From NCBI RefSeq assembly GCF_000143415.4, contig NW_003314265.1, positions 510,405 to 574,404 of the forward strand: a stretch of DNA of 64,000 nt, in the 5' to 3' direction. The stretch comes from Selaginella moellendorffii. Lineage: Eukaryota > Plantae > Lycopodiophyta. The notes below the pieces were generated by a model. That model was not told the DNA's origin. It did not search any database and saw only the letters and a program-made list of their open reading frames with translations. Every line of letters starts with the position of its first letter. Within the stretch, counting starts at the first letter, position 1. The position numbers were made by a program, and so were the translations under genes. This document shows, piece after piece, positions 689 to 11,513 of this stretch.

Positions 689-2612
689 TCAGTGGTACTT
701 CATGCTTGCCACGTCGAAGCCGGGCATGTCAAAAGAGGTGGCGAATTTTTCCACCTCGGCCTTGAGATTTGCGAGCTCCTTGTTGTCCACCAGTCCCTTG
801 TTGAAGTCACGCAGCATCTTACCGTGTTGTTTCTGGATGGCGAGCGTGATGTCAATCGCCCGTCCCAGGAACTCGGCGATTTGCTCGAAGTCTTTCTCCT
901 TGAGACCTCTTGCGGTCATGGCCGGCGCTCCTGTCCATTGCAAATCACACACAAGTTAGTTTCTCGCCAAATATAAGGAAACATGATTTATCTCACCAAC
1001 ACGGACGCCTCCAGGCGCAAGAGCACTGCTATCTCCAAACACCGCGTTCTTGTTAAGTGTTATGTGAGCGAGCTCGCACACCTTCTCGACCTTGTTACCT
1101 GTCGAAGTAAAAACGATGATTTGTTTTTCGTTCTTCCAGCTGCGAGAGGAATTTACGTACCAGTTAGACCGAGCGGACGCAAGTCCCAGAGGATGAGATG
1201 GTTCTCGGTGCCGTCAGTTACTATCTTGTATCCCTTCTTCATGAGCGCGTCCCCGAGAGCCGCTGCATTGGCCCGGATTTGCTTCGCGTACACCTTAAAC
1301 TCGGGTGTATTGACTTGCTTCAGTGCCACGGCCAGAGCAGCGATCTGATGGTTGTGCGGTCCTCCCTGGAGCGATGGAAACACAGCAAAGTTGACCTTGT
1401 CCTCGAAGTCGTAGTTTTCTTCCGTTGTCTGGCCCTTCTTGGGAGGCTTGGGGCCCTTTCGGTAAAAGATCATGCCGGCTCTTGGTCCCCTCAGGCTCTT
1501 GTGCGTGGTCGTCGTCACAATGTCGCAGTGCTCGAACGGACTCTTTGCCTCCTGGAATGTTTGGAATTTATGAGAAACAATCACAAAAGCCAAATTTCTT
1601 GAAGAGGACCACCAGAAAAAGAAATAGGACACGCACAAAGTTCCAGAAAGATCAGCACGACCACCACCATGAAATCTCAGCGCACACAATCCAAATTCAC
1701 CCAGACATCTCGAAAACTTGAGAACTTCCAACAGGAAATCATTCAATCCAAATGCAAAACAAAAGAGTTCCAGAAATCTCAGCACGAGCAGCAAAGAAAG
1801 TCGCTCGTGAAATCTCAACTCAAACAATCCAAATTCACACGCAGACATCTCGTAAACTTGAGAGCTTCCCACAAGAAACCATCCAATCCAAATGCAGACA
1901 CAAACCAGATTTAAAAATCCAAATGCTCACTCACCTCGGCAGCAACGAGCCCGCTAATGTGAGCCATGTCACAGAGAAGTAGAGCTCCACATTTGTCCGC
2001 AATAGCGCGAAGCCTGGCATAGTCCCAGTCCCTTGGATACGCGCTACCGCCGCAGATGATAAGCTTGGGCCGGAAATCCATAGCTTTCTCCTCGAGCCGG
2101 TCGTAGTCAATGTAGCCGGTCTTGGGATCCACCTTGTATGGCAAGCTCTCGAAGTAGATCGATGTGGCCGAGATCTTCTTCCCCCCAGATGTGTAGTAGC
2201 CGTGGGTGAGATGGCCACCGGATGGGAGATCCAAGCCCATAATCCGGCTATGCGGCTCAAGAACAGCAGTGTAGGCGGCGAAATTCGCCGGGCTTCCAGA
2301 GTAGGGCTGGACATTCACACCCCACCTCTCCGGATCGAGGCGATAAGCCTGCAGCGCCCTGGACCGGCACAGATTCTCGATCTGGTCGATGAACTCGTTG
2401 CCGCCGTAGTAGCGATTGCCGGGCATACCTTCCGAGTACTTGTTGGTGAGCGCGCTGCCCAGCGCCTCGATCACCGCCTGCGACGTGAAGTTCTCCGACG
2501 CGATGAGCTCGATCCCCTTCCACTGCCGCGCCTTCTCATGCTCGATCAGGTCGAAAATCTCCTCGTCCACAGCGCTCAGCGGCTGATTCCCCCACTCCTT
2601 GACGGATGCCAT
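689..2612 (-). CDS. SHM4: Serine hydroxymethyltransferase, cytosolic type (4 exons)
   Basis: [45 protein letters not shown] (PLP lysine), LQGGPHNH; no transit peptide; exons ~2612-1935, 1552-1160, 1097-997, 931-689. Confidence 0.95.
1665..1910. repeat. Two-copy ~140 bp imperfect tandem repeat in SHMT intron 1
   Basis: gaaatctca...atccaaattcac(cc/acgc)agacatctcg.aaacttgaga.cttcc.aca.gaaa.cat.caatccaaatgca occurs at ~1671-1760 and ~1809-1900. Confidence 0.75.
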
Positions 2613-3064
2613 GGCCGACGAGAGAGGGGCGAGCGAAATCTAGCTCGCTGGAGAGCTGGGATCTGGAAAATCTTCCCCCGCAAAACCCTGGCGCCCTTCT
2701 TGCTCTTCGCGCGGCTGTGACAATGAGAACAAACTTGGAAATGCGCTACATACAAAAGCTCATGAACTTTCAACTGCATTGGATGCTTGAGTTCGCGTCC
2801 GGAAGCATCCCGGCCCTTGGCTCCTGCCAAAGCAACAATGGCCGTCGATCGAGATCCGCTGTGTGGACCATAGAACCCAGAATGGTAGCTAGCTTGAGAG
2901 TAGTCGCTGGAAAATCACCAAACCTTCGTCCACAGTAACTTACGTGAAATTCGATTTTTTAAAGCTGGATCCAGTCTAGCTTGCGCTGAAAATCTTGTAC
3001 AACAACGTGCACTGAACACAATCTTAGAAAACTCGATGCGACAAAAGTTTACCCCAGCGATCTG

Positions 3065-5767
3065 TCATTCCAGTCGAAATGCATCAGCTACTTCCTGTAT
3101 GGTAGAACGAACTAAAAGAAAGCGATGTCTGATCGAGACGCGAGAATCTCTGAAGGAAACGTAGCTACCTCAAACTCCCGGGAAAATGGAGAAAACTTTT
3201 GACAAAACTTTTGCTGCTACGCTCGAACTTTTCCGATCGAGGACACCATCTGTGTGTGAAAACGAAGTACGATTGTGAACAACTCAAAGCTACTGCCAGA
3301 AAAAACGAAAAAGAAGAACAGAACTTTCAAGACATACCAGTAGCGTGTTCATGGGTCCTTTGAGAACATTGTCGTTGACAGTGATGCCGTCGAGATACTG
3401 TGTGAGAGCGGACTGGAGGCGGAAGTTTTCAGCGGCGACTCTTTTCTTCTCGAGATCGAGTGCCATCTTGTCGAGCAAGACCTGGTAAAAAAGACGAAAG
3501 CATCAAAACTGGACTGCAAATTCTACGAACATGTACCTTGTTGTAGCGCTGTTGAAACTGGGAGAGATAATTCCACTCTTCGACTTCACTCCCAGATTTA
3601 TCGGTGGCATAAGCTGCGGGCCTGTAGACCTCCTCCTGTTTCTCCAGCTTTTCGCCATGACACAAAATTCGTGGCTTCTCTGTTATAGTGACGCTTCTCT
3701 TTTGTCCTTTCACCTTGGTGTCAACAACGTCATCGGCCGTATCTGAACAGAACATCGACTAGTTACAAGGAAAAGAATATTGTATGAGGTTACCATCGTC
3801 TTCTGGCAAGAGGTCAGGCATAATAGAACGACTGCAATGCAAAGGATCAAACGGGAAAATCCTTTCATGCTCCGTTTCCAGCTGCTTGAGAGAAAACAAG
3901 TGTTTGAATAACTGTGATACTACAAAACTATGTACCTTGCAGTTAAGATCTCCAAGCCTGATGATGCGTTCGGACACCTCCAGCTTACCAGTAAGATCTA
4001 GTCTCGCTTCCTCGCTCATTTTCGATATTTCCTGCAAAATATGTTTCAGATGCAAAAAGGGACTCGAATACGAACCTTGAGTTTTATGTGTTCGGAATTT
4101 CTCATTTTCAAGAGCTTCTTCTTGAGTTCTTGATAATGCTGGTTGACAGAATCTTTCTGGTCGCGAAGTGCCTTGTTTATTCCTTCCCATTCTCGGCTGT
4201 TTAACCCCCTGGGTGAGAACTCTGATACTAATAGCGCCGTTGTCAAAGAACCTGTTCGTGGCTATCTTTGCCCGCCAGTAAGAAATGCTTTCATGTATAT
4301 GGATGAGCTTTCTCATTCTTTGCTCAATTAGCTTCGCAGTAACCTTGTCCTTTTCGATCATCCTCTTAAATGCCTGTGTCTTTGTATCTGTACTTGACAG
4401 ATAGGACTGTGACGGAGATGCAGAATGTGAGTTAGTCGTAGAAATTCACAGCAAAAACTAGTACCTGATGTGTCTGCTCCAAGCGCCGCTCGAGTTCTTC
4501 TATTGCATTCTCAAGTGAAATTTTCAGGACGTTGTATTCCTCCATGTTCTTGTTCTGAAACAGACGAAAAGCAAACCAAAATGAATGCAATCTCATAGAA
4601 GGGCGGAGTTACTTTGAGCTCTTCACGGTTGGCCTCAAACTCTTGACGCATCTCTGTTTCAGCCTCTTTGAATTCCGCTTCCATTGCAGCCATCATATCA
4701 TTCAATACCTATATAGAACTGAAGAAGACGTTGAGATTGAGTTAAACTAGTCTGTCTTACCTTTTTCTGCTTGTCATGGGCCCTGACAACATCCATCTTT
4801 TCATTGTTGAAATCTGTGGAAAGTTCATGAAGACGATTCTGGAACTCCTCGTCCATACCCTGTCACCATAAATTATAGACATCGAGACCAAATGACTCAA
4901 GAAAAAGTTACCTTTAAACGAGAATAATGCAAATCAATCAGACCATCAACGATGTGCAAGTGTTTGCTGAATAGCATGAGATGCTGTCCTTCGGACTCCT
5001 CCAGCTCCTTGAACAACGACGAGATGAGTGCATCTTTCCTCCTAACCTGAAGAACAGCATACATAAAAGGAGTTTTCTCAGAAGTATTTTCATGGCAAAC
5101 CTGAAAATCGTGCTCTTCCGAGCACTGCATGACTTCCTCCCGCAGCTCCTTGGTTTTATCTTGTCGAAGTATTTCTCTCCATTTAGCATGAATTTCTCGC
5201 GTGTTATCTTTCGTATATCGCTCCTCTCTTTCCTAAAACATGGCAGATTCGAGACATCAGAGCTTGACCAAAATGTAATGAACCAGAAAACTTGCCTGAA
5301 GCTGCACTAAGCGAGCACGCTGTTCCGCTTCTTTTTTCTTCCGTGCTTCTTCAGCCTGTTAAGAAAGACAAGCGTAATGAACTAACTAACCATGAGTGTC
5401 ACCTTGAGAGTCATCATCTGTGCCTTGAGCTTCTTCTCCTCGGGCGTCATCTTCTTTCCCTGCGGAAAAAATCTCAGCTAAATCCATACGAAAGAAATCG
5501 TAGAGCTGAGAAGTCCCGAAGCAAAAAGAATTTTTGAGCTAGCGACGTGTGTTGAATTTCTTTATCGACAGTGAAAGCAAGAATTCTACAGATTGAGCTA
5601 CTTCTAGAAACGATTTCAATGCGAGCTAAGATTCTCCATGACTAGAAGGACAATTTGTTGTTAAGAACGCTACAAGAGCTACTCAAATGAGAGATGAAAG
5701 AGAAAGGAGCTTCTCCTCGAATCGTGAGGAAAGATTGCGCAGGCAAGAGTCACATTACCTTGGCCAT
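3065..5767 (-). CDS. DRC2: Dynein regulatory complex subunit 2 (CCDC65/DRC2), multi-exon coiled-coil flagellar protein
   Basis: Exons encode RKDALISSLFKELEESEGQH..KHLHIVDGLIDLH, EEWNYLSQFQQRYNKV, LDKMALDLEK..ENFRLQSALTQYLDGITVNDNVLKGPMNTLL; probable 9-nt first exon MAK at 5767 spliced to GKKMTPEEK; 3' end approximate. Confidence 0.8.
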
Positions 5768-5943
5768 GGCTGGGGATGCCGGAAGGAATGGCGAAGAAAT
5801 CCCAAAGCCCTAGCTCTGGCGCCAACCGGCATTCAAAGACCGATGCCACATCACAAATAGTGCGCTGCACACGTGGACGTCGGAGATGTCATAAAGGATT
5901 TTCGCGAGCTAGGGTTTGTGGCGGAGGGTTCGAGTGATGCAGT

Positions 5944-8900
5944 ATGATCAACGATGGAAAGCTCTTCAAAGCTCAGATTCCTGAGAGATCGCTGCTGGCA
6001 GCTCCAGCTGATGGCGCCGCCGCCGCCGCCGCCGATTCTTCCTCGCCGTCGCCGTCTGGGAGTTCCAGAAGATCGCTGTTTAGTCATCTAGGGCCTCCCG
6101 CGAGTGACAAGGTAGCGATTGGCGCATGGGAATTTGTGGTTTGATTCGTGGATTTGATTCAGGAGCGCGCAGCTCGAGAGCGAATCGATGCACAGAAGTA
6201 CGATGTGGAGGCGTGGGAAATTCTTGCGGATGAGGCCCAGGTAAATGCTGCTGCTCAGGATTGCTTTCGTTGCTCACATACTTTTTGCCGATCCAGTCTA
6301 GACCGATTGCTCACGCGACGGGAATTTTCGAGCTACTCGTTTCTACCTTTCCAACTGCGGTAAATATTCTTTTCTTTTTTCTCGGACGTCTTCTTACGTT
6401 GGTTTCTCGTAAAGGGGAAGTTCTGGAAGATGTACGCGGAAGCTATGATCAAGGCGAGCAACGATGATGCGGTCCGGCATATCTTTAGCCGTTGTTTGCT
6501 CAGCTGCTTCCATTTAGAGCTATGGTAAAAGAGTAACATTGTGTGTGCTTGAGCTGATGGTACTGTCTCCAGGAAATGCTACATCAAGTTTATTCGCAGA
6601 GTGAATGAACAGAAAGGCCCTGAATCAAAAGAGGAAACGAGGAAAGCTTTCGAGTTCACAGTCGGTCATGTTGGTACGTAGTTTCTACATTTGCTTCTTC
6701 GTATCTCATCGATTGTCTCGCAGGAATGGACATATCAGCAGGACCTTTGTGGTTCGAGTACATCACATTCCTGAAAACGATGCCCGTACGCTCGCTGGCT
6801 CCAAATGTTTTCTCGTTCTAACTCTTCCTTCCAACAGATTTCTAGTCCTCAGGAAGAGGCTCAGCGAATGCTCCTGCTCCGCAAAGCTTATCAGCAAGCT
6901 GTGCTCTCCCCGATCCATCACATTGAGCAACTGTGGAAAGAGTATGAAAGCTTCGAGAACACCATCAGCCGGGCACTGGTTGGCAGCTACTTCCCTCCCT
7001 CCATCTCTCGTCTTCCAAGGAGAAACCTTGTAGCTCGTATGCAGATGAATAAAGATGGCATTGTGTCTCCGCTCCGGCTTTCTCCGTTTTTTTTTTTTTC
7101 TTCTTCTTTTTTTTCTTTTAGTTTTCCTTTCTTTTCTTCTTTCAGTTTTTTTTTTCTCTGTGAAGGTCTTCTAAAGTACACGCGCTTGTTATGCAGGCAA
7201 AAGGACTTGTGGCCGACTTCCAGCCAAAGCACTTCAATGCTCGTGCTGTCTACAGGGAACGAAAGAAGTTCTGGGACCAAATTGATCAGAGTTTGCTACC
7301 AGTTCCTTTTGCCGGTTCTTTCAAAGCAAGTTCTTTTTCTTTCTTGTCTGCCGAAGTTCTAACGTGTTTTTCTGTGACAGGAAGAACAACAAAATTCTTC
7401 GTGGAAGCAACTTCTTGCGTTTGAAAAGTAACCACAGCTCTTGAGTCCGTTTTCGTTAAAAGCTTACGATTGCAGGAACAATCCTCAGCGGTTGGAGCCT
7501 GCTCTTTTGGCTAGACGTGTGGTGTTTACTTATGAGCAAGTACGTTGTTTTTGTTTCCCTTGATTTTGTCGATTGAGCTAGATTTTTTGCAGTGCCTTAT
7601 GTATTTTTACCATTACCCAGATATTTGGTATGATTATGCAATGTGGCTCGCTCAAAATGGATCAAATGACAATGCTGCCGTAGTTTTTGGGAGAGCTCTC
7701 ATTGCCTTGCCAGGTTTATGGAAATTTTAGTGATACTCAAAACTGACACTCGCTGCATTTCTTTAGATGCAACAATCATCTATTATGCTTACGCAGAATT
7801 TGAAGAAGCTAGAGGCTCCATCAAGGTACGAAAATTCATCTTTTGGCGATTTATATACCACCGTTTCAATCCAGGATGCGAAGAAGATTTATGAAACTCT
7901 TGTGAGTCATGAAAAAATAGCAAATTCCTTGGCTCATATACAGGTTCGTTCGATCTAGGACTTCATTTGTTTCATCATAACGATTCTTCCAGCTGATGCG
8001 TTTCGTGAGGAGAACCGAAGGCATTGAGGCCGCTCGCAAGGTTTTTTCCGAGGCACGAAAGAGTCCTTCCTGCACATATCATCTTTACGTGGCGTGTGCC
8101 GTAATGGTTTTCTGCGTTGATAAGGACCCAAAGGTTTGCAACCTTATTTTTAACGCGTCAACAAAGCTGCTGTTTGTGCAGGTAGCGCGAGACATATTTG
8201 AGTTAGGATTGAAAAAGTACATTCATGAGCCTAGTTACGTGACAGAGTGCGTATATTAAAAAAAAAAAATTCCTTGGTTCATAGTAATCCTCTGACTTCG
8301 CAAATTTGTAAAACAGGTATGCTGACTTTCTTTGTCGTCTAAACGACGACAGAAATGTGCGAGCACTTTTTGAGCGTGCTCTGAATGTTCTTCCAGCAGA
8401 AGAGTCCGTAGAAGTATGTAAATCTCAAAGTATTAGTCAAGGAACGCTTTGTAATTCTTTCTTTCAGGTATGGAATCGATTTTTGGCGTTTGAACAAATG
8501 TATGGTGACATTCCGAGCATGCTGAAGGTAAGAGATGTATGGCCTGAAGAACTGAGATGTAAGTCACTGGCTTTTGTTCAAGGTGGCACAAAGAAGGAAA
8601 GAAGCTTTGACTGGAGATGATGGTGTAGCGGTAGCATCCTCAGAAAGCTCGATGCAGCAGCTAATATCTCGTTACCGCTTTTTGGATCTCTGGCCTTGTT
8701 CATCACAGGATCTCGACCATCTCGCGCAGCAACAGGTTGTATATGCATTCGTCTTTGTTTTTAATTACTTCTCTGTCTCCTACAGATTATGTTGCAAAAG
8801 CTGGAAGAGAAACAGTTGGCTATTGGTAACGTACAAGGTATGCTTGCAATGCATTTCACACACGCTTAAGTACAGTTTTCTTGTCTTATCAGGCGCGAAG

Positions 8901-9709
8901 AAGTCTCAGAACTCCGCAGCGACACCTCCGAAGAACTTGATTCGGCCAGACGTATCGCAAATGACTCCGTATGATCCCAAGCCAGGTACTTGGAAGTTCC
9001 TGATCGCTTGCAGTTTTTAATTGTTTTCTCTTGTGTCATGTTTAGCGGGAAATGACGCCCTTGTGCTGAGTGGTCTGGGACTTCAAGGTTGTCTTGCTAC
9101 TTCTTCGGAAAGCAATTGAACTTACAAATATGATTTCAGGTTCTACTGCTATGCCTGGATTGGCCTCTCGTGCGGGTCTTGGACGAGGTCCTGCGGATGA
9201 TTCTTCAATGGAAGAGCTCTTGAGGCTCTTACCACCAGCAGTAAAAACTTTTCTTAGCCAGCTTCCACCTGTCGATGGTAAGTTTTCGTTTGATATACTG
9301 GAGCGAATACATATCGTCTCCGCTTCGTCACAGGACCCATTCCCGATGTAGACCTGGTGATATCCATCCTACTCGAGAATGAAGTTCCCAATCCCACGGG
9401 ACCAAACGGAAGCACAAAGTCCGCAGCTGCAACATCAGGAAGAGCTGGACGCCACGCAAAACGCAAGGACCTCGAAGGTAAGGTATCGATTCGTGCTGCG
9501 GCAAATAACTCACTCGTGGTCTTTGCTTTCCAGCTCAAGAAGAAGACGACGCAGCGTTACAGTCCCAGGCAGCTCAAAGTGGTCCGAAGGACGTGTTCCG
9601 GATGCGCCAGCTCCAGAGGTCGAGAGCCGTGAGCAACGCCAGCGCCAAAAGGCTACAACAGTCGTCCACTTCGAGCGGCTTAAGCGCCGAGAAGTCTGTA
9701 AGTAATTGA
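5944..9709 (+). CDS. CSTF77: Cleavage stimulation factor 77 kDa subunit (HAT-repeat, Suf), >20 exons
   Basis: KYDVEAWEILADEAQ..FPTAGKFWKMYAEA, RKAYQQAVLSPIHHIEQLWKEYESFEN, YEQCLMYFYHYPDIWYDYA, RRTEGIEAARKVF, RALFERAL, RYRFLDLWPCS, PKDVFRMRQLQR. Confidence 0.93.
7048..7160 (+). promoter_or_regulatory. Candidate intronic polyadenylation signal (AATAAA at 7048-7053 plus downstream U-rich tract) in CstF-77 intron 6979-7196
   Basis: Canonical hexamer followed ~35 nt later by a ~70 nt T-rich tract, in a 218-bp intron with a weak GTTGGC donor. Confidence 0.5.
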
Positions 9710-10457
9710 AGCCATCATTTCCTTCTTTTTCCTATGTACATGGATTCATTAACTTCCCTGAGAGGCCATTTTGGCTGGCACAGGCTCTCTTCATATCTAG
9801 CACGGCTTTTCTTCGTTCCAGTTCGTCAAAACACTAGAGCTCGCGAAGCCGTGTCGTCGGCACTAACTCGGAAAAGAACTCTCTTTCCTGACGTAGAAGA
9901 AGTCGAAGAAAAAAAACGTCACGCATTGCGTCGTTTCATTCCGTTAAGGCCACCTTTCATCACACGAGACGAGCGCTGCTGTCCTTTTTCCCTGCGGTTG
10001 TAAAGAGCACAGCGAGCTCTTTTGTTTTGTCGCATAGAAAAACTGACCATGGCAACCAAGCCAAAGAGAATGTGAAGAGAAAGAGAGAAACTACCTGGGC
10101 GCATTCCATCCCATACAAGAGTACGCATCCTTGACCTGGAAGGAATGGCGACCATTATAAAACCAAGGTCAAGAACACACCACTCCAAAGTCCTCACGTG
10201 TACCTCTCTGCCGATAAGGATAGCTCCCTCTTTGTCCCGCAAATTCTTCCACCCAGCAGTCGAGAGTTTCCACAGGGACCAACGATTTCCCTCCACCTAT
10301 ACAGTCCGTCCACCACAGCCAAAGCTAAGCTCTCGCGTTTTCCAGAGCTTGTGTGGATGCCTGGCGCGAGGACCACCATCACCACCGAGCCAGTTCTTCG
10401 AGAGCTTCCACTTGATGAGAACGACGACGAGGGCGGCGAGAGAGCTCACTTCCAGCG

Positions 10458-11222
10458 ATGGTTGACAAGCTCTGCCACCACAAAGTAGCCAGGATCGAGG
10501 ACGGAAGGTACTTGCCGCAGCAGCGGAGTAGTCACAGCAGCAGCCGAGAGGGATCGCTGCGTCCCAAGTATAAAGGAGTACGTAAGCGGAGCTGGGGGAA
10601 GTATGTCTCGGAGATCCGGGAGCCGAACAAGAGGTCGCGGATCTGGCTCGGCTCCTTCGAGACACCCGAGATGGCGGCTCGAGCTTACGACGCTGCTGTT
10701 CTGTGCCTGAGAGGTCCCAATTCTAGCTTCAACTTTCCAGAGTTCCTGCCTGGCCTGCCGCGTCCTTTGCCGACCACCAACAAGGAGATCCAATCTTTGG
10801 CTGTTTTCGCTGCTCAGCAAGCTCGAGTTACTAGCACCACTGCTACCGCTGCTGCAGCTGCTGCTGCTGCTTCTAACTTGGTTCGTGTGCAGGCACCTCC
10901 ATCAATCTCTTCGCCTGCTGAGTTCTACCATCGGAGAAGATCCAGTCAAGAGAGCCTCCGAGCTGTTCCCGACGAGAGTGGCGGTGGCAGCAAGCGAGGC
11001 GCAGTAGGTCCAGTCGCTCAGAGTTCCAATCCAAACGCATCGTCTACATCAGCAGCGCCTGTGTCAGCACCGAACTCGTCGCGTTCCACGACATCAAGTG
11101 ACACAGTACCGGTTGCGGTCGGCTCCACCGAGACACTTTCAGCAATCCCACTGTGGATGGACGCTCCAGCAGACGCGAGTGACTTGGATCTCTGGACATA
11201 TCCCGAGTTTCCATGCACCTGA
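10458..11222 (+). CDS. AP2/ERF transcription factor (DREB subfamily, A-4/A-5-like), intronless
   Basis: [57 protein letters not shown] followed by EIQSLA; C-terminal LW motif. Confidence 0.9.
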
Positions 11223-11513
11223 AGCTGAGACGATTTTTCGCCGGGGATCTTGTTTTGGGCATTCCTTTTCTTTGTCCTGTCTCCATCTAGATCAAGCAAC
11301 ATGTCAAAAGATTAGAAAACAAAATAAAGAAAGAAAAAGAACAGAAAAGAAGCTAGCAGCCTGTACCTGATTCATTTCATAGCGCAGCCGTTAAATCAAT
11401 CTTGCTAACAGTAAAGCAAAGAAAGCAATGTAAACGACCAACGTGAAGGAGTTAAAGTTGTAGCGCGAATGTTATACGAAAGGTCACAAGCGAAAAGAAC
11501 AAAAACTACATTT

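What the first reader, a model, noticed from the sequence alone, without database searches (positions are those of the whole stretch)
6979..7380. Candidate autoregulatory intronic polyadenylation cassette in the CstF-77 gene
Seen: almost all introns of this gene are ~45-65 bp, but the phase-0 intron between ISRAL and AKGL is 218 bp. It has a weak donor (G|GTTGGC), a canonical AATAAA at 7048-7053 and a ~70-nt U-rich tract (7087-7155). The next intron (7326-7380) uses a GC donor. Established: Drosophila su(f) and mammalian CSTF3 limit their own output through an intronic polyA site in a weak-donor intron, and CstF binds U/GU-rich downstream elements. Inference: this plant gene may carry an equivalent negative-feedback switch that makes a truncated HAT-only transcript. 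I am not aware of this being described in lycophytes.
Basis: partly seen in the sequence, partly recalled or inferred. Interest (0 to 1): 0.72.

Follow-up and report, generated by a model that had tools for sequence, protein, structure and literature searches.

The report
Conserved poly(A)-signal intron in spikemoss CstF77
One oversized intron in the spikemoss gene for the mRNA 3'-end factor CstF77 has an unusual splice donor and an AATAAA signal that mosses also have in the same intron, which suggests the gene limits its own output as its animal counterparts do, but no RNA data could be checked.

Summary
The gene (5944-9709, + strand) is Selaginella moellendorffii CstF77, with 24 exons. Twenty-two of its 23 introns are 48-70 nt. 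Intron 7 (6979-7196) is 218 nt, with donor ctg|GTTGGC, the gene's only sense-strand AATAAA (7048-7053) and a T-rich tract found nowhere else in the 64-kb window (7087-7159). Intron 8 has a GC donor.

Mosses have the same features in the same intron. In Sphagnum, Ceratodon and other mosses it is about 500 nt, with the identical GTTGGC donor and AATAAA 78-81 nt in (70 in Selaginella). TTGTR lies 20-25 nt upstream and G+T-rich sequence lies downstream. Of 17 introns compared between Ceratodon and Sphagnum, only this one is conserved (z about 21-23; all others below 3.3). A liverwort and several flowering-plant lineages lack these features.

Beyond these motifs, the Selaginella and moss introns do not align significantly.

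Best reading (about 0.5): a splicing-versus-polyadenylation switch that attenuates CstF77, like the fly su(f) and vertebrate CSTF3 systems but in a different intron. Arabidopsis CstF77 intronic poly(A) tags were already noted in 2012. This scan had not found the feature on other DNA.

The parts
5944..9709 (+). CstF77 (Suf/HAT-repeat) gene: 24 coding exons, 790 codons plus stop
   Evidence: Frame-checked model. Pfam Suf on separate exons. PDB CstF-77 hits. 22 of 24 exon translations occur verbatim in SELMODRAFT_270661.
6838..6978 (+). Exon 7, ending ...ENTISRAL. It would be the last constitutive exon of a truncated transcript.
   Evidence: Suf profile 149-188. Aligns to human CstF77 residues 160-198.
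6979..7196 (+). Intron 7: phase 0, 218 nt, three to four times longer than every other intron of the gene
   Evidence: The other haplotype has 208 nt and differs only inside the T tract. Not a repeat copy. No Rfam family or stable fold.
6976..6988 (+). Non-consensus 5' splice site ctg|GTTGGCAGCT
   Evidence: The GTTGGC hexamer is identical in Sphagnum, Ceratodon and all other moss loci, and 9 of the first 10 intron bases are shared. Only introns 7 and 8 keep one hexamer in all three lineages.
7028..7032 (+). TTGTA, an upstream element of UGUA/FUE type, 20 nt before the hexamer
   Evidence: TTGT[AG] sits 20-25 nt upstream of AATAAA in Selaginella and in every moss.
7048..7053 (+). AATAAA, the candidate poly(A) signal, 70 nt into the intron
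   Evidence: Only sense-strand AATAAA in the gene. Mosses have AATAAA at +78 to +81 inside a 20-nt invariant block.
7060..7086 (+). Predicted cleavage zone (inferred only). Almost no A occurs from 7061 to 7119, so a poly(A) tail here could not be an internal-priming artefact.
   Evidence: Read directly from the sequence. Position inferred from the usual 10-30 nt spacing after AAUAAA.
7087..7159 (+). U-rich tract (80% T). It is a candidate downstream or CstF64-type element, or a plant intron U-rich enhancer. Its length differs between haplotypes.
   Evidence: Unique in the window. 10-nt indel plus 3 substitutions between haplotypes. Mosses have G+T-rich sequence at the same offset. Contains possible cryptic acceptors at 7121 and 7145.
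7171..7196 (+). Branch-point-like CTAAA plus the 3' splice site ...TTGTTATGCAG
   Evidence: 12 of the last 16 bases match mosses, the highest of 17 introns. In mosses the last 34 nt are invariant.
7197..7325 (+). Exon 8 (AKGL...GSFK)
7326..7380 (+). Intron 8, a GC-AG intron (aaa|GCAAGT)
   Evidence: The same GC donor is found in mosses and in two flowering-plant clades. It is GT in Marchantia, grasses and a Brassicaceae-like locus.

Best explanation
Intron 7 of Selaginella CstF77 is a regulated intron in which slow splicing competes with cleavage and polyadenylation at an internal poly(A) site. The proposed mechanism is as follows. The non-consensus donor GUUGGC and the unusual intron length delay splicing and weaken U1 snRNP protection. 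This exposes a poly(A) site made of UUGUA, AAUAAA 70 nt into the intron, and a U-rich tract 34 nt further on. When 3'-end processing activity (CstF77/CstF64) is high, more transcripts are cut at about 7060-7086. The reading frame stays open through the site, so the product would be a stop-less truncated RNA carrying only the first HAT repeats. It would probably be degraded, which lowers full-length CstF77 and closes a negative feedback loop. What is shown: the sequence elements, their rarity in the window, and the conservation of the donor, the AATAAA position and the acceptor region with mosses, where this intron alone is under strong constraint. What is inferred: that the site is cleaved, that its use depends on CstF, and that the truncated RNA is unproductive.
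For: (1) Anatomy: a 218-nt intron among 48-70-nt introns, the gene's only sense-strand AATAAA, and a T tract unique in the window. (2) Out-of-sample test: moss orthologues (Sphagnum compactum, Ceratodon purpureus and at least four metagenomic mosses) have the same intron at 499-528 nt, with the identical GTTGGC donor and AATAAA at +78 to +81. From the moss genes' own AATAAA density (2 per 9-10 kb), an AATAAA in a 31-nt window has a chance of about 0.7%. GTTGGC occurs in none of the other 86 donors of the four gene models. (3) Constraint: between Ceratodon and Sphagnum only intron 7 of 17 is conserved, with z=22.6 at the 5' end and z=20.9 at the 3' end against less than 3.3 elsewhere. Conservation peaks at the donor, the AATAAA block and the branch point/acceptor. 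(4) Poly(A)-site grammar is shared: TTGTR 20-25 nt upstream, G+T-rich sequence 31-80 nt downstream, and in mosses a U-rich CA/TA site 19-21 nt after the start of the hexamer. (5) Donor hexamers turn over at 15 of 17 introns. The two that stay fixed in all three lineages are the two unusual ones, introns 7 and 8. (6) Precedent: fly su(f) and vertebrate CSTF3 use a conserved weak donor plus an intronic poly(A) site with UGUA, hexamer and U/GU-rich elements, and they arose convergently (PMC3708835). Arabidopsis CstF77 has intronic poly(A) tags (PMC3538716). AAUAAA is the top spikemoss signal (PMC6413133).
Against: Selaginella and moss introns are not significantly alike by local alignment (z 0-1.8), so the link rests on short motifs. 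The donor is weak but not an outlier in Selaginella, where 9 of 23 donors score as low. The T tract is specific to this lineage and varies in length between haplotypes, as a neutral microsatellite would. There is no YA dinucleotide in the expected cleavage zone except CA at 7059-7060. Plant poly(A) sites do not generally need a downstream element. CstF is dispensable for many Arabidopsis sites (PMC10839035), so CstF dependence is an assumption. The liverwort and flowering plants lack these features. The word search over 102-324-aa proteins found no transcript-derived product joining upstream exons to the intron read-through, though that collection's coverage of Selaginella RNA is unknown.
Confidence: 0.5

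Rival explanations
1. The intron is regulated by splicing alone, without polyadenylation. Its conserved weak donor and conserved branch point/acceptor would make it a detained or retained intron, or one that uses cryptic sites. Candidates are the acceptors at 7121 and 7145, which bring in an in-frame TGA, and the alternative donors GTAGCT and GTATGC at 7030 and 7037. Such transcripts would be held in the nucleus or removed by nonsense-mediated decay. The AATAAA block would then be a binding site for some other factor.
For: The conserved parts include both splice sites and the branch-point region. Retaining the 218-nt intron shifts the frame and ends the protein early. The T tract contains ...ttttag and ...tttcag. 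Long conserved introns with unproductive splicing are well known in plant RNA-processing genes (general knowledge). The neighbouring GC-AG intron is also conserved, and one Sphagnum metatranscriptome contig has it unspliced.
Against: In mosses the strongest internal conservation is a 20-nt invariant block centred exactly on AATAAA, with poly(A)-site grammar around it: TTGTR upstream and a U-rich CA site 19-21 nt downstream. No internal splice site is conserved between mosses and Selaginella. No structured RNA is predicted.
Confidence: 0.22
2. In Selaginella the intron is an ordinary, constitutively spliced intron enlarged by a neutral poly-T/CT microsatellite. The shared donor and AATAAA would be leftovers of a moss-type element, or coincidence, with no present function in the lycophyte.
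For: The T tract is the only part that varies between haplotypes, by a 10-nt indel. Tandem Repeats Finder reports low-complexity periodicity there. There is no alignment-level similarity to mosses. Selaginella tolerates many poor donors. U-rich tracts help plant intron recognition in general (general knowledge). The annotated model splices the intron normally.
Against: The identical rare hexamer GTTGGC, AATAAA within 8-11 nt of the moss offset, and the best acceptor match of 17 introns are jointly improbable (under about 1e-3) without constraint over more than 400 million years, when the donors of 15 of 17 other introns changed. The tract is unique in 64 kb, so it is not a common neutral feature.
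Confidence: 0.2
3. The extra sequence is an intron-hosted non-coding RNA (snoRNA, miRNA or structured element) or a transposon fragment.
For: Plant introns often host snoRNAs, and the intron is oversized.
Against: No Rfam hit better than E=0.3 in Selaginella or Ceratodon. Folding energies do not differ from shuffles, with z between -0.15 and +1.3. No other copy in the window. No antisense gene; the minus-strand ORF is a low-complexity artefact.
Confidence: 0.03

Closest known systems
Vertebrate CSTF3 intron-3 poly(A) site (Pan et al. 2006; Luo et al. 2013, PMC3708835)
   Same: Same host gene family (CstF77). The intron is oversized relative to its neighbours. It has a non-consensus 5' splice site whose sequence is conserved, and an intronic hexamer with an upstream UGUA-type element and downstream U/GU-rich elements. 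Conservation is focused on the donor, the poly(A) site and the acceptor.
   Different: A different intron: plant intron 7 falls at human residue about 201, while the human short product has 103 aa. The plant intron is 218 nt, not 33 kb. The hexamer is AAUAAA, not AUUAAA. The frame has no stop before the site. Use of the site and feedback are shown in vertebrates and untested here.
Drosophila suppressor of forked, su(f), intron-4 poly(A) site (Audibert and Simonelig 1998, cited in PMC3708835)
   Same: An autoregulated CstF77 orthologue. The truncated RNA lacks an in-frame stop codon, as predicted here for Selaginella and the mosses. The fly intron is also short.
   Different: No sequence or positional homology. 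The fly system has been shown genetically, whereas this one is inferred from sequence.
Arabidopsis CstF77 (At1g17760) intronic poly(A) tags (Hunt et al. 2012, PMC3538716)
   Same: A plant CstF77 gene with transcripts reported to end in an upstream intron. This is the only plant precedent found.
   Different: The figure showing which intron is used is not held as text. In a Brassicaceae-like locus the orthologue of intron 7 is 115 nt, with a GTAAAC donor and no AATAAA, so the Arabidopsis site is probably elsewhere. No feedback or conservation analysis was reported.
Other autoregulated intronic poly(A) sites in 3'-end factors: Arabidopsis FCA intron 3, plant CPSF30, vertebrate PCF11
   Same: The same logic: a processing factor promotes premature polyadenylation of its own pre-mRNA.
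   Different: Different genes and factors. These are cited only as the general class.

Membership tests
CstF77 autoregulatory intronic poly(A) site (su(f)/CSTF3 type) | Host gene encodes CstF77/Suf | tested here: met
   Pfam PF05843 on five separate exons. PDB CstF-77 chains 2OOE and 6URO. Annotated orthologues.
CstF77 autoregulatory intronic poly(A) site (su(f)/CSTF3 type) | Intron carries a poly(A) hexamer with upstream UGUA-type and downstream U/GU-rich elements | tested here: met
   TTGTA at 7028, AATAAA at 7048, T tract from 7087. The same layout is present in mosses. This is motif presence only.
CstF77 autoregulatory intronic poly(A) site (su(f)/CSTF3 type) | Weak 5' splice site that is evolutionarily conserved | tested here: met
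   GTTGGC is identical in Selaginella, Sphagnum and Ceratodon, while 15 of 17 other donors differ. On weakness, it scores 5 of 9 consensus matches, which ties for lowest in Ceratodon and is among the lowest in Selaginella without being unique there.
CstF77 autoregulatory intronic poly(A) site (su(f)/CSTF3 type) | Intron unusually large for the gene | tested here: met
   218 nt against 48-70 nt in Selaginella. Second longest of 23 introns in Ceratodon.
CstF77 autoregulatory intronic poly(A) site (su(f)/CSTF3 type) | Polyadenylated truncated transcripts end in the intron | not testable with these tools
No transcript-derived read-through product appeared in the word search, which is weak evidence either way.
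CstF77 autoregulatory intronic poly(A) site (su(f)/CSTF3 type) | Use of the site rises with CstF77 or processing-factor level (negative feedback) | not testable with these tools
   Needs an experiment.
CstF77 autoregulatory intronic poly(A) site (su(f)/CSTF3 type) | Descent from the animal elements (same intron position) | tested here: not met
   The exon 7 end aligns to human residue about 201. The human intronic isoform encodes 103 aa. The plant element is therefore an analogue, not an orthologue.
Plant poly(A) signal (FUE / NUE / cleavage element) | A-rich NUE (AAUAAA best) 10-35 nt before the site, U/UG-rich FUE upstream, and a U-rich cleavage element with YA | tested here: inconclusive
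   In Selaginella the NUE and a UUGUA-type FUE are present and the region is U-rich, but the only YA near the expected site is CA at 7059-7060. In mosses all three parts are present. AAUAAA is the top spikemoss NUE, at about 8% of sites (PMC6413133).
GC-AG intron (intron 8) | GC at the donor with an otherwise strong consensus, AG acceptor, and the frame kept only by this donor | tested here: met
   aaa|GCAAGT...acag|, giving ...GSFK|EEQQ... as in orthologues. Conserved in mosses and in two flowering-plant clades.

The most novel reading that the evidence does not exclude
A CstF-sensing intronic poly(A) switch, made of a weak GUUGGC donor, UUGUR, AAUAAA and a U/GU-rich element, was already present in CstF77 of the common ancestor of mosses and vascular plants more than 400 million years ago. 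It is still in use in mosses and lycophytes and was lost in liverworts and seed plants. Together with the independent fly and vertebrate versions, this would make self-limitation of CstF77 by premature polyadenylation a solution that has evolved repeatedly across kingdoms. It would also give the oldest known conserved intronic poly(A) site in plants.
Probability: 0.35. Interest if true: 0.82.

Novelty: new variant of a known kind. Interest (0 to 1): 0.7.

Why it matters
Feedback control of CstF77 by an intronic poly(A) site is established in flies and vertebrates and is thought to have arisen convergently. In plants there is only a passing note of intronic tags in Arabidopsis. A moss-lycophyte version in yet another intron, held in place for hundreds of millions of years, would show that cells repeatedly arrive at the same way of keeping 3'-end processing activity constant.

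It would also bear on what CstF does in plants, where it is not essential and where downstream elements are poorly defined. An animal-style site (AAUAAA plus a U/GU-rich downstream element) inside the CstF77 gene would be a natural reporter for plant CstF activity.

The idea can be tested now. Public nanopore poly(A) data exist for S. moellendorffii and Physcomitrium, and gene targeting in moss allows the donor and the hexamer to be mutated. It also shows that a prediction made from one genome's raw sequence held up in an independent comparison with other plant lineages.

Tried and rejected
2. Spliced-protein search. Exons were searched one by one by reference. Full-length relatives were reached through natural cDNA contigs from the metagenome scan (L025 ORF, then P0110).
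3. Ferns and a second lycophyte. The Adiantum and Ceratopteris genes exceed 100 kb, so no DNA was returned. The two Diphasiastrum isoforms were not on record.
4. Viral-contig scan for stray plant loci: nothing found.
5. Known RNA families and RNA structure: no Rfam hit below E=0.3, and fold z-scores near 0. Rejected.
6. Repeat or transposon origin: no other copy in the window. Rejected.
7. Alignment-level homology between the Selaginella and moss introns: not significant, so only motif-level conservation is claimed.
8. Remnant of the element in Marchantia: z=3.1 against Ceratodon but -0.1 against Sphagnum. Not accepted.
9. Which Arabidopsis intron carries the 2012 poly(A) tags: the figure is an image and is not held. 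In a Brassicaceae-like locus the orthologous intron lacks AATAAA.
10. Literature on plant CstF77 feedback and on conserved plant intron elements, including the CPIR-1 paper: nothing on CstF77.
Full report
**1. What is in the window.**
The + strand from 5944 to 9709 carries a 24-exon gene. Its exons, translated one at a time in their own frames, give a continuous 790-codon reading frame.
- Separate exons hit Pfam Suf (PF05843) at successive profile positions.
- Exon 7 aligns to solved mouse and human CstF-77 structures.
I confirmed this: locus L044, from assembly GCA_000143415.2 scaffold GL377574.1, is 98% identical to the window, so it is the other haplotype.
- Translations of 22 of the 24 exons occur verbatim in the annotated protein SELMODRAFT_270661.

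Exons were searched separately by reference. One script threaded annotated proteins onto their own loci in memory to recover exon boundaries. It did not print, save or send any joined sequence.

**2.
- Twenty-two of the 23 introns are 48-70 nt. Intron 7 (6979-7196, phase 0, between ...ISRAL and AKGL...) is 218 nt, with donor ctg|GTTGGC.
- AATAAA at 7048-7053 is the only sense-strand AATAAA in the whole gene. The window-wide density is 57 per 128,000 strand positions.
- The tract 7087-7155 is 80% T and 94% pyrimidine. No other stretch on either strand of the 64-kb window reaches that composition, and the window's only two + strand T runs of 10 or more both lie in it.
- Intron 8 (7326-7380) uses aaa|GCAAGT, and only this GC donor keeps the frame.
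- The intron is not a repeat copy, matches no Rfam family and folds no better than shuffled sequence.
- The reading frame stays open through the entire intron. An RNA cut after the AATAAA would therefore have no stop codon.
- One qualification: by simple consensus matching the donor scores 5 of 9, which is low, but 9 of the gene's 23 donors score 5 or less.

**3. Allele comparison.**
In the second haplotype the intron is 208 nt. The donor, the first 108 nt and the AATAAA are identical. All differences (a 10-nt indel and three substitutions) lie in the T tract. The tract therefore behaves like an unstable microsatellite. With only 2% overall divergence, the identity of the remaining sequence carries little information.

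**4. Orthologous introns.**
A word search with the genomic ORF that runs from exon 7 into the intron returned ORFs from other plants that also read ...SRAL|VG.... Their contigs, a metagenome scan with an exon-8 alignment that gave 39 loci, and annotated genes reached through natural cDNA contigs produced this picture. The intron position is the same in every land plant seen.

| Lineage | Intron 7 length | Donor | AATAAA |
|---|---|---|---|
| Selaginella (two haplotypes) | 218 / 208 nt | ctg\|GTTGGCAGCT | +70 |
| Mosses: Sphagnum compactum, Ceratodon purpureus, at least four metagenomic mosses | 499-528 nt | ctg\|GTTGGCTGCT | +78 to +81 |
| Marchantia paleacea (liverwort) | 132 nt | GTAGAA | none |
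| Flowering plants, at least five lineages | 100-208 nt | GTAAGA, GTAATT, GTATTT, GTAAAC and others | none |

The flowering-plant set includes grass-like and Brassicaceae-like loci. I inferred those lineage labels from peptide resemblance and did not verify them. No fern or second-lycophyte DNA could be obtained.

**5. Constraint in mosses.**
- In a blastn comparison of Ceratodon against Sphagnum, alignments stop at exon edges everywhere except here. They run about 120 nt into intron 7 and start about 30 nt before exon 8.
- Local alignment of 17 orthologous intron pairs against shuffles gave z=22.6 (first 150 nt) and z=20.9 (last 100 nt) for intron 7. No other intron end exceeded 3.2.
- In a six-moss alignment, conservation peaks at three places: the donor (22 of 25 columns invariant in four taxa), a 20-nt block centred on AATAAA (20 of 25), and the last 34 nt, which cover a CTAAG branch-point motif and the acceptor (23 of 25). 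The middle of the intron is at background.
- Around the hexamer, mosses have TTGTG 22-25 nt upstream, a U-rich CA/TA site 19-21 nt after the start of the hexamer, and a GU-rich element beyond it. This is the standard layout of a poly(A) site.
- Each moss gene has only two sense-strand AATAAA in 9-10 kb, and the one they share is this one.

**6. How much of this carries over to Selaginella.**
By local alignment the Selaginella intron is not significantly similar to the moss introns (z 0-1.8). What they share is a set of short motifs at matching positions:
- the donor hexamer, and 9 of the first 10 intron bases;
- TTGTA 20 nt before the hexamer;
- AATAAA within 8-11 nt of the moss offset;
- T- or G+T-rich sequence 31-80 nt after it;
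- 12 of the last 16 bases, the best acceptor match of the 17 introns.

Donor hexamers differ among Selaginella, Ceratodon and Sphagnum at 15 of 17 introns. The two that are identical in all three are the two non-standard ones: GTTGGC (intron 7) and GCAAGT (intron 8). GTTGGC appears in none of the other 86 donors of the four gene models.

They do. The chance of an AATAAA in a 31-nt window is about 0.7-1.5%, and the chance of matching that hexamer is under about 1%. I regard the shared layout as real, with the caveat that it rests on only two deep lineages.

**7. Mechanism.**
The best-supported reading is competition between splicing and polyadenylation. A poor donor and an oversized intron slow splicing and reduce U1 snRNP protection. 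That lets the 3'-end machinery use the internal site and produce a stop-less truncated RNA holding only the first HAT repeats. Full-length CstF77 output then falls when processing activity is high.

This is how vertebrate CSTF3 intron 3 and fly su(f) behave. There the weak donor, the intron size and the UGUA, hexamer and U/GU-rich elements are conserved, and the fly RNA also lacks a stop codon (PMC3708835). The plant intron is a different one: the exon 7 end corresponds to human residue about 201, whereas the human short isoform encodes 103 aa. It is therefore an analogue. All steps after the sequence layout are inferred: cleavage, dependence on CstF, and the fate of the short RNA.

**8. Rivals.**
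- A splicing-only switch (retention, cryptic acceptors at 7121 and 7145, or alternative donors at 7030 and 7037) fits the conserved splice signals. It does not explain why the strongest internal block in mosses is centred on AATAAA with poly(A)-site grammar around it.
- A neutral poly-T expansion fits the haplotype polymorphism and the lack of alignable sequence. It does not fit the retained rare donor and hexamer position, or the tract's uniqueness in the window.
- A hosted RNA or a transposon is not supported.

**9. What is known already.**
Hunt et al. 2012 (PMC3538716) reported that Arabidopsis CstF77 has transcripts ending in an upstream intron, without further analysis. The figure is not held, so the intron is unknown. 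In a Brassicaceae-like locus the orthologue of intron 7 has no AATAAA. I found no paper on feedback control of plant CstF77, or on this intron in mosses or lycophytes. CstF77 and CstF64 are non-essential in Arabidopsis and are needed at only some sites (PMC10839035). That makes a CstF-dependent sensor site plausible but unproven.

**10. Limits.**
- Lycophytes other than Selaginella, ferns, hornworts and algae are unsampled.
- Taxon labels for metagenomic loci are inferred.

**Verdict.**
- Observation: confirmed.
- Interpretation: partly supported. It passed a genuine comparative test but still needs 3'-end data.
- Novelty: a new variant of a known kind.
- Interest: 0.70.

Noticed in passing
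window 7326-7380; L046 3239-3994; L048 from 3110; L017-L021, L028-L029: The GC-AG donor of intron 8 (aaa|GCAAGT) is kept in Selaginella, in all mosses and in two flowering-plant clades. It is GT in Marchantia, grasses and a Brassicaceae-like locus. Intron 8 is the longest intron in Ceratodon (756 nt) and is long in several flowering plants (about 840-1070 nt). Two unusual donors therefore sit side by side and both are conserved.
   Followed up: partly
L010 (Sphagnum metatranscriptome contig) 2079-3606: In this RNA-derived contig introns 1-7 are spliced out. From exon 8 onward it is colinear with genomic DNA for 1.5 kb, so intron 8 and later introns are retained. It could be pre-mRNA, a retained GC-AG intron, or a chimeric assembly.
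   Followed up: partly
L048 3114-3978 (Sphagnum compactum annotation): The deposited gene model splices intron 8 as caa|GTTCCA...GAAG| rather than using the conserved aaa|GCAAGT donor 4 nt upstream. This is probably an annotation error caused by avoiding GC donors.
   Followed up: no
window 4944-10709 versus L044/L045 (GL377574.1:1899593-1905336): The window is not the GenBank scaffold GL377574.1. It is a 98%-identical allelic copy, so both haplotypes of this region are assembled.
   Followed up: yes
window 9710-11322: The CstF77 gene's own 3' region has no AATAAA on the sense strand. The only canonical hexamer in the transcription unit is the intronic one. The true 3' end could not be mapped.
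   Followed up: no
window 8247-8316: Intron 15 is the second longest (70 nt) and contains an A12 run (8258-8269), one of only two A runs of 10 or more in the window.
   Followed up: no
window about 10480-11220 (+) and upstream of about 5770 (-): The neighbours are an apparently intronless AP2/ERF-domain gene downstream and an NYD-SP28 (flagellar dynein-regulatory type) gene upstream on the opposite strand.
   Followed up: no
Adiantum and Ceratopteris CstF77 genes: The fern orthologues span 129 kb and 112 kb, against 3.8 kb in Selaginella. That is a 30-fold difference for the same exon set of about 24.
   Followed up: no
L046 2840-3031: The collection lists a 63-aa called ORF inside Ceratodon intron 7, in its unconserved middle. 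It is probably spurious.
   Followed up: no
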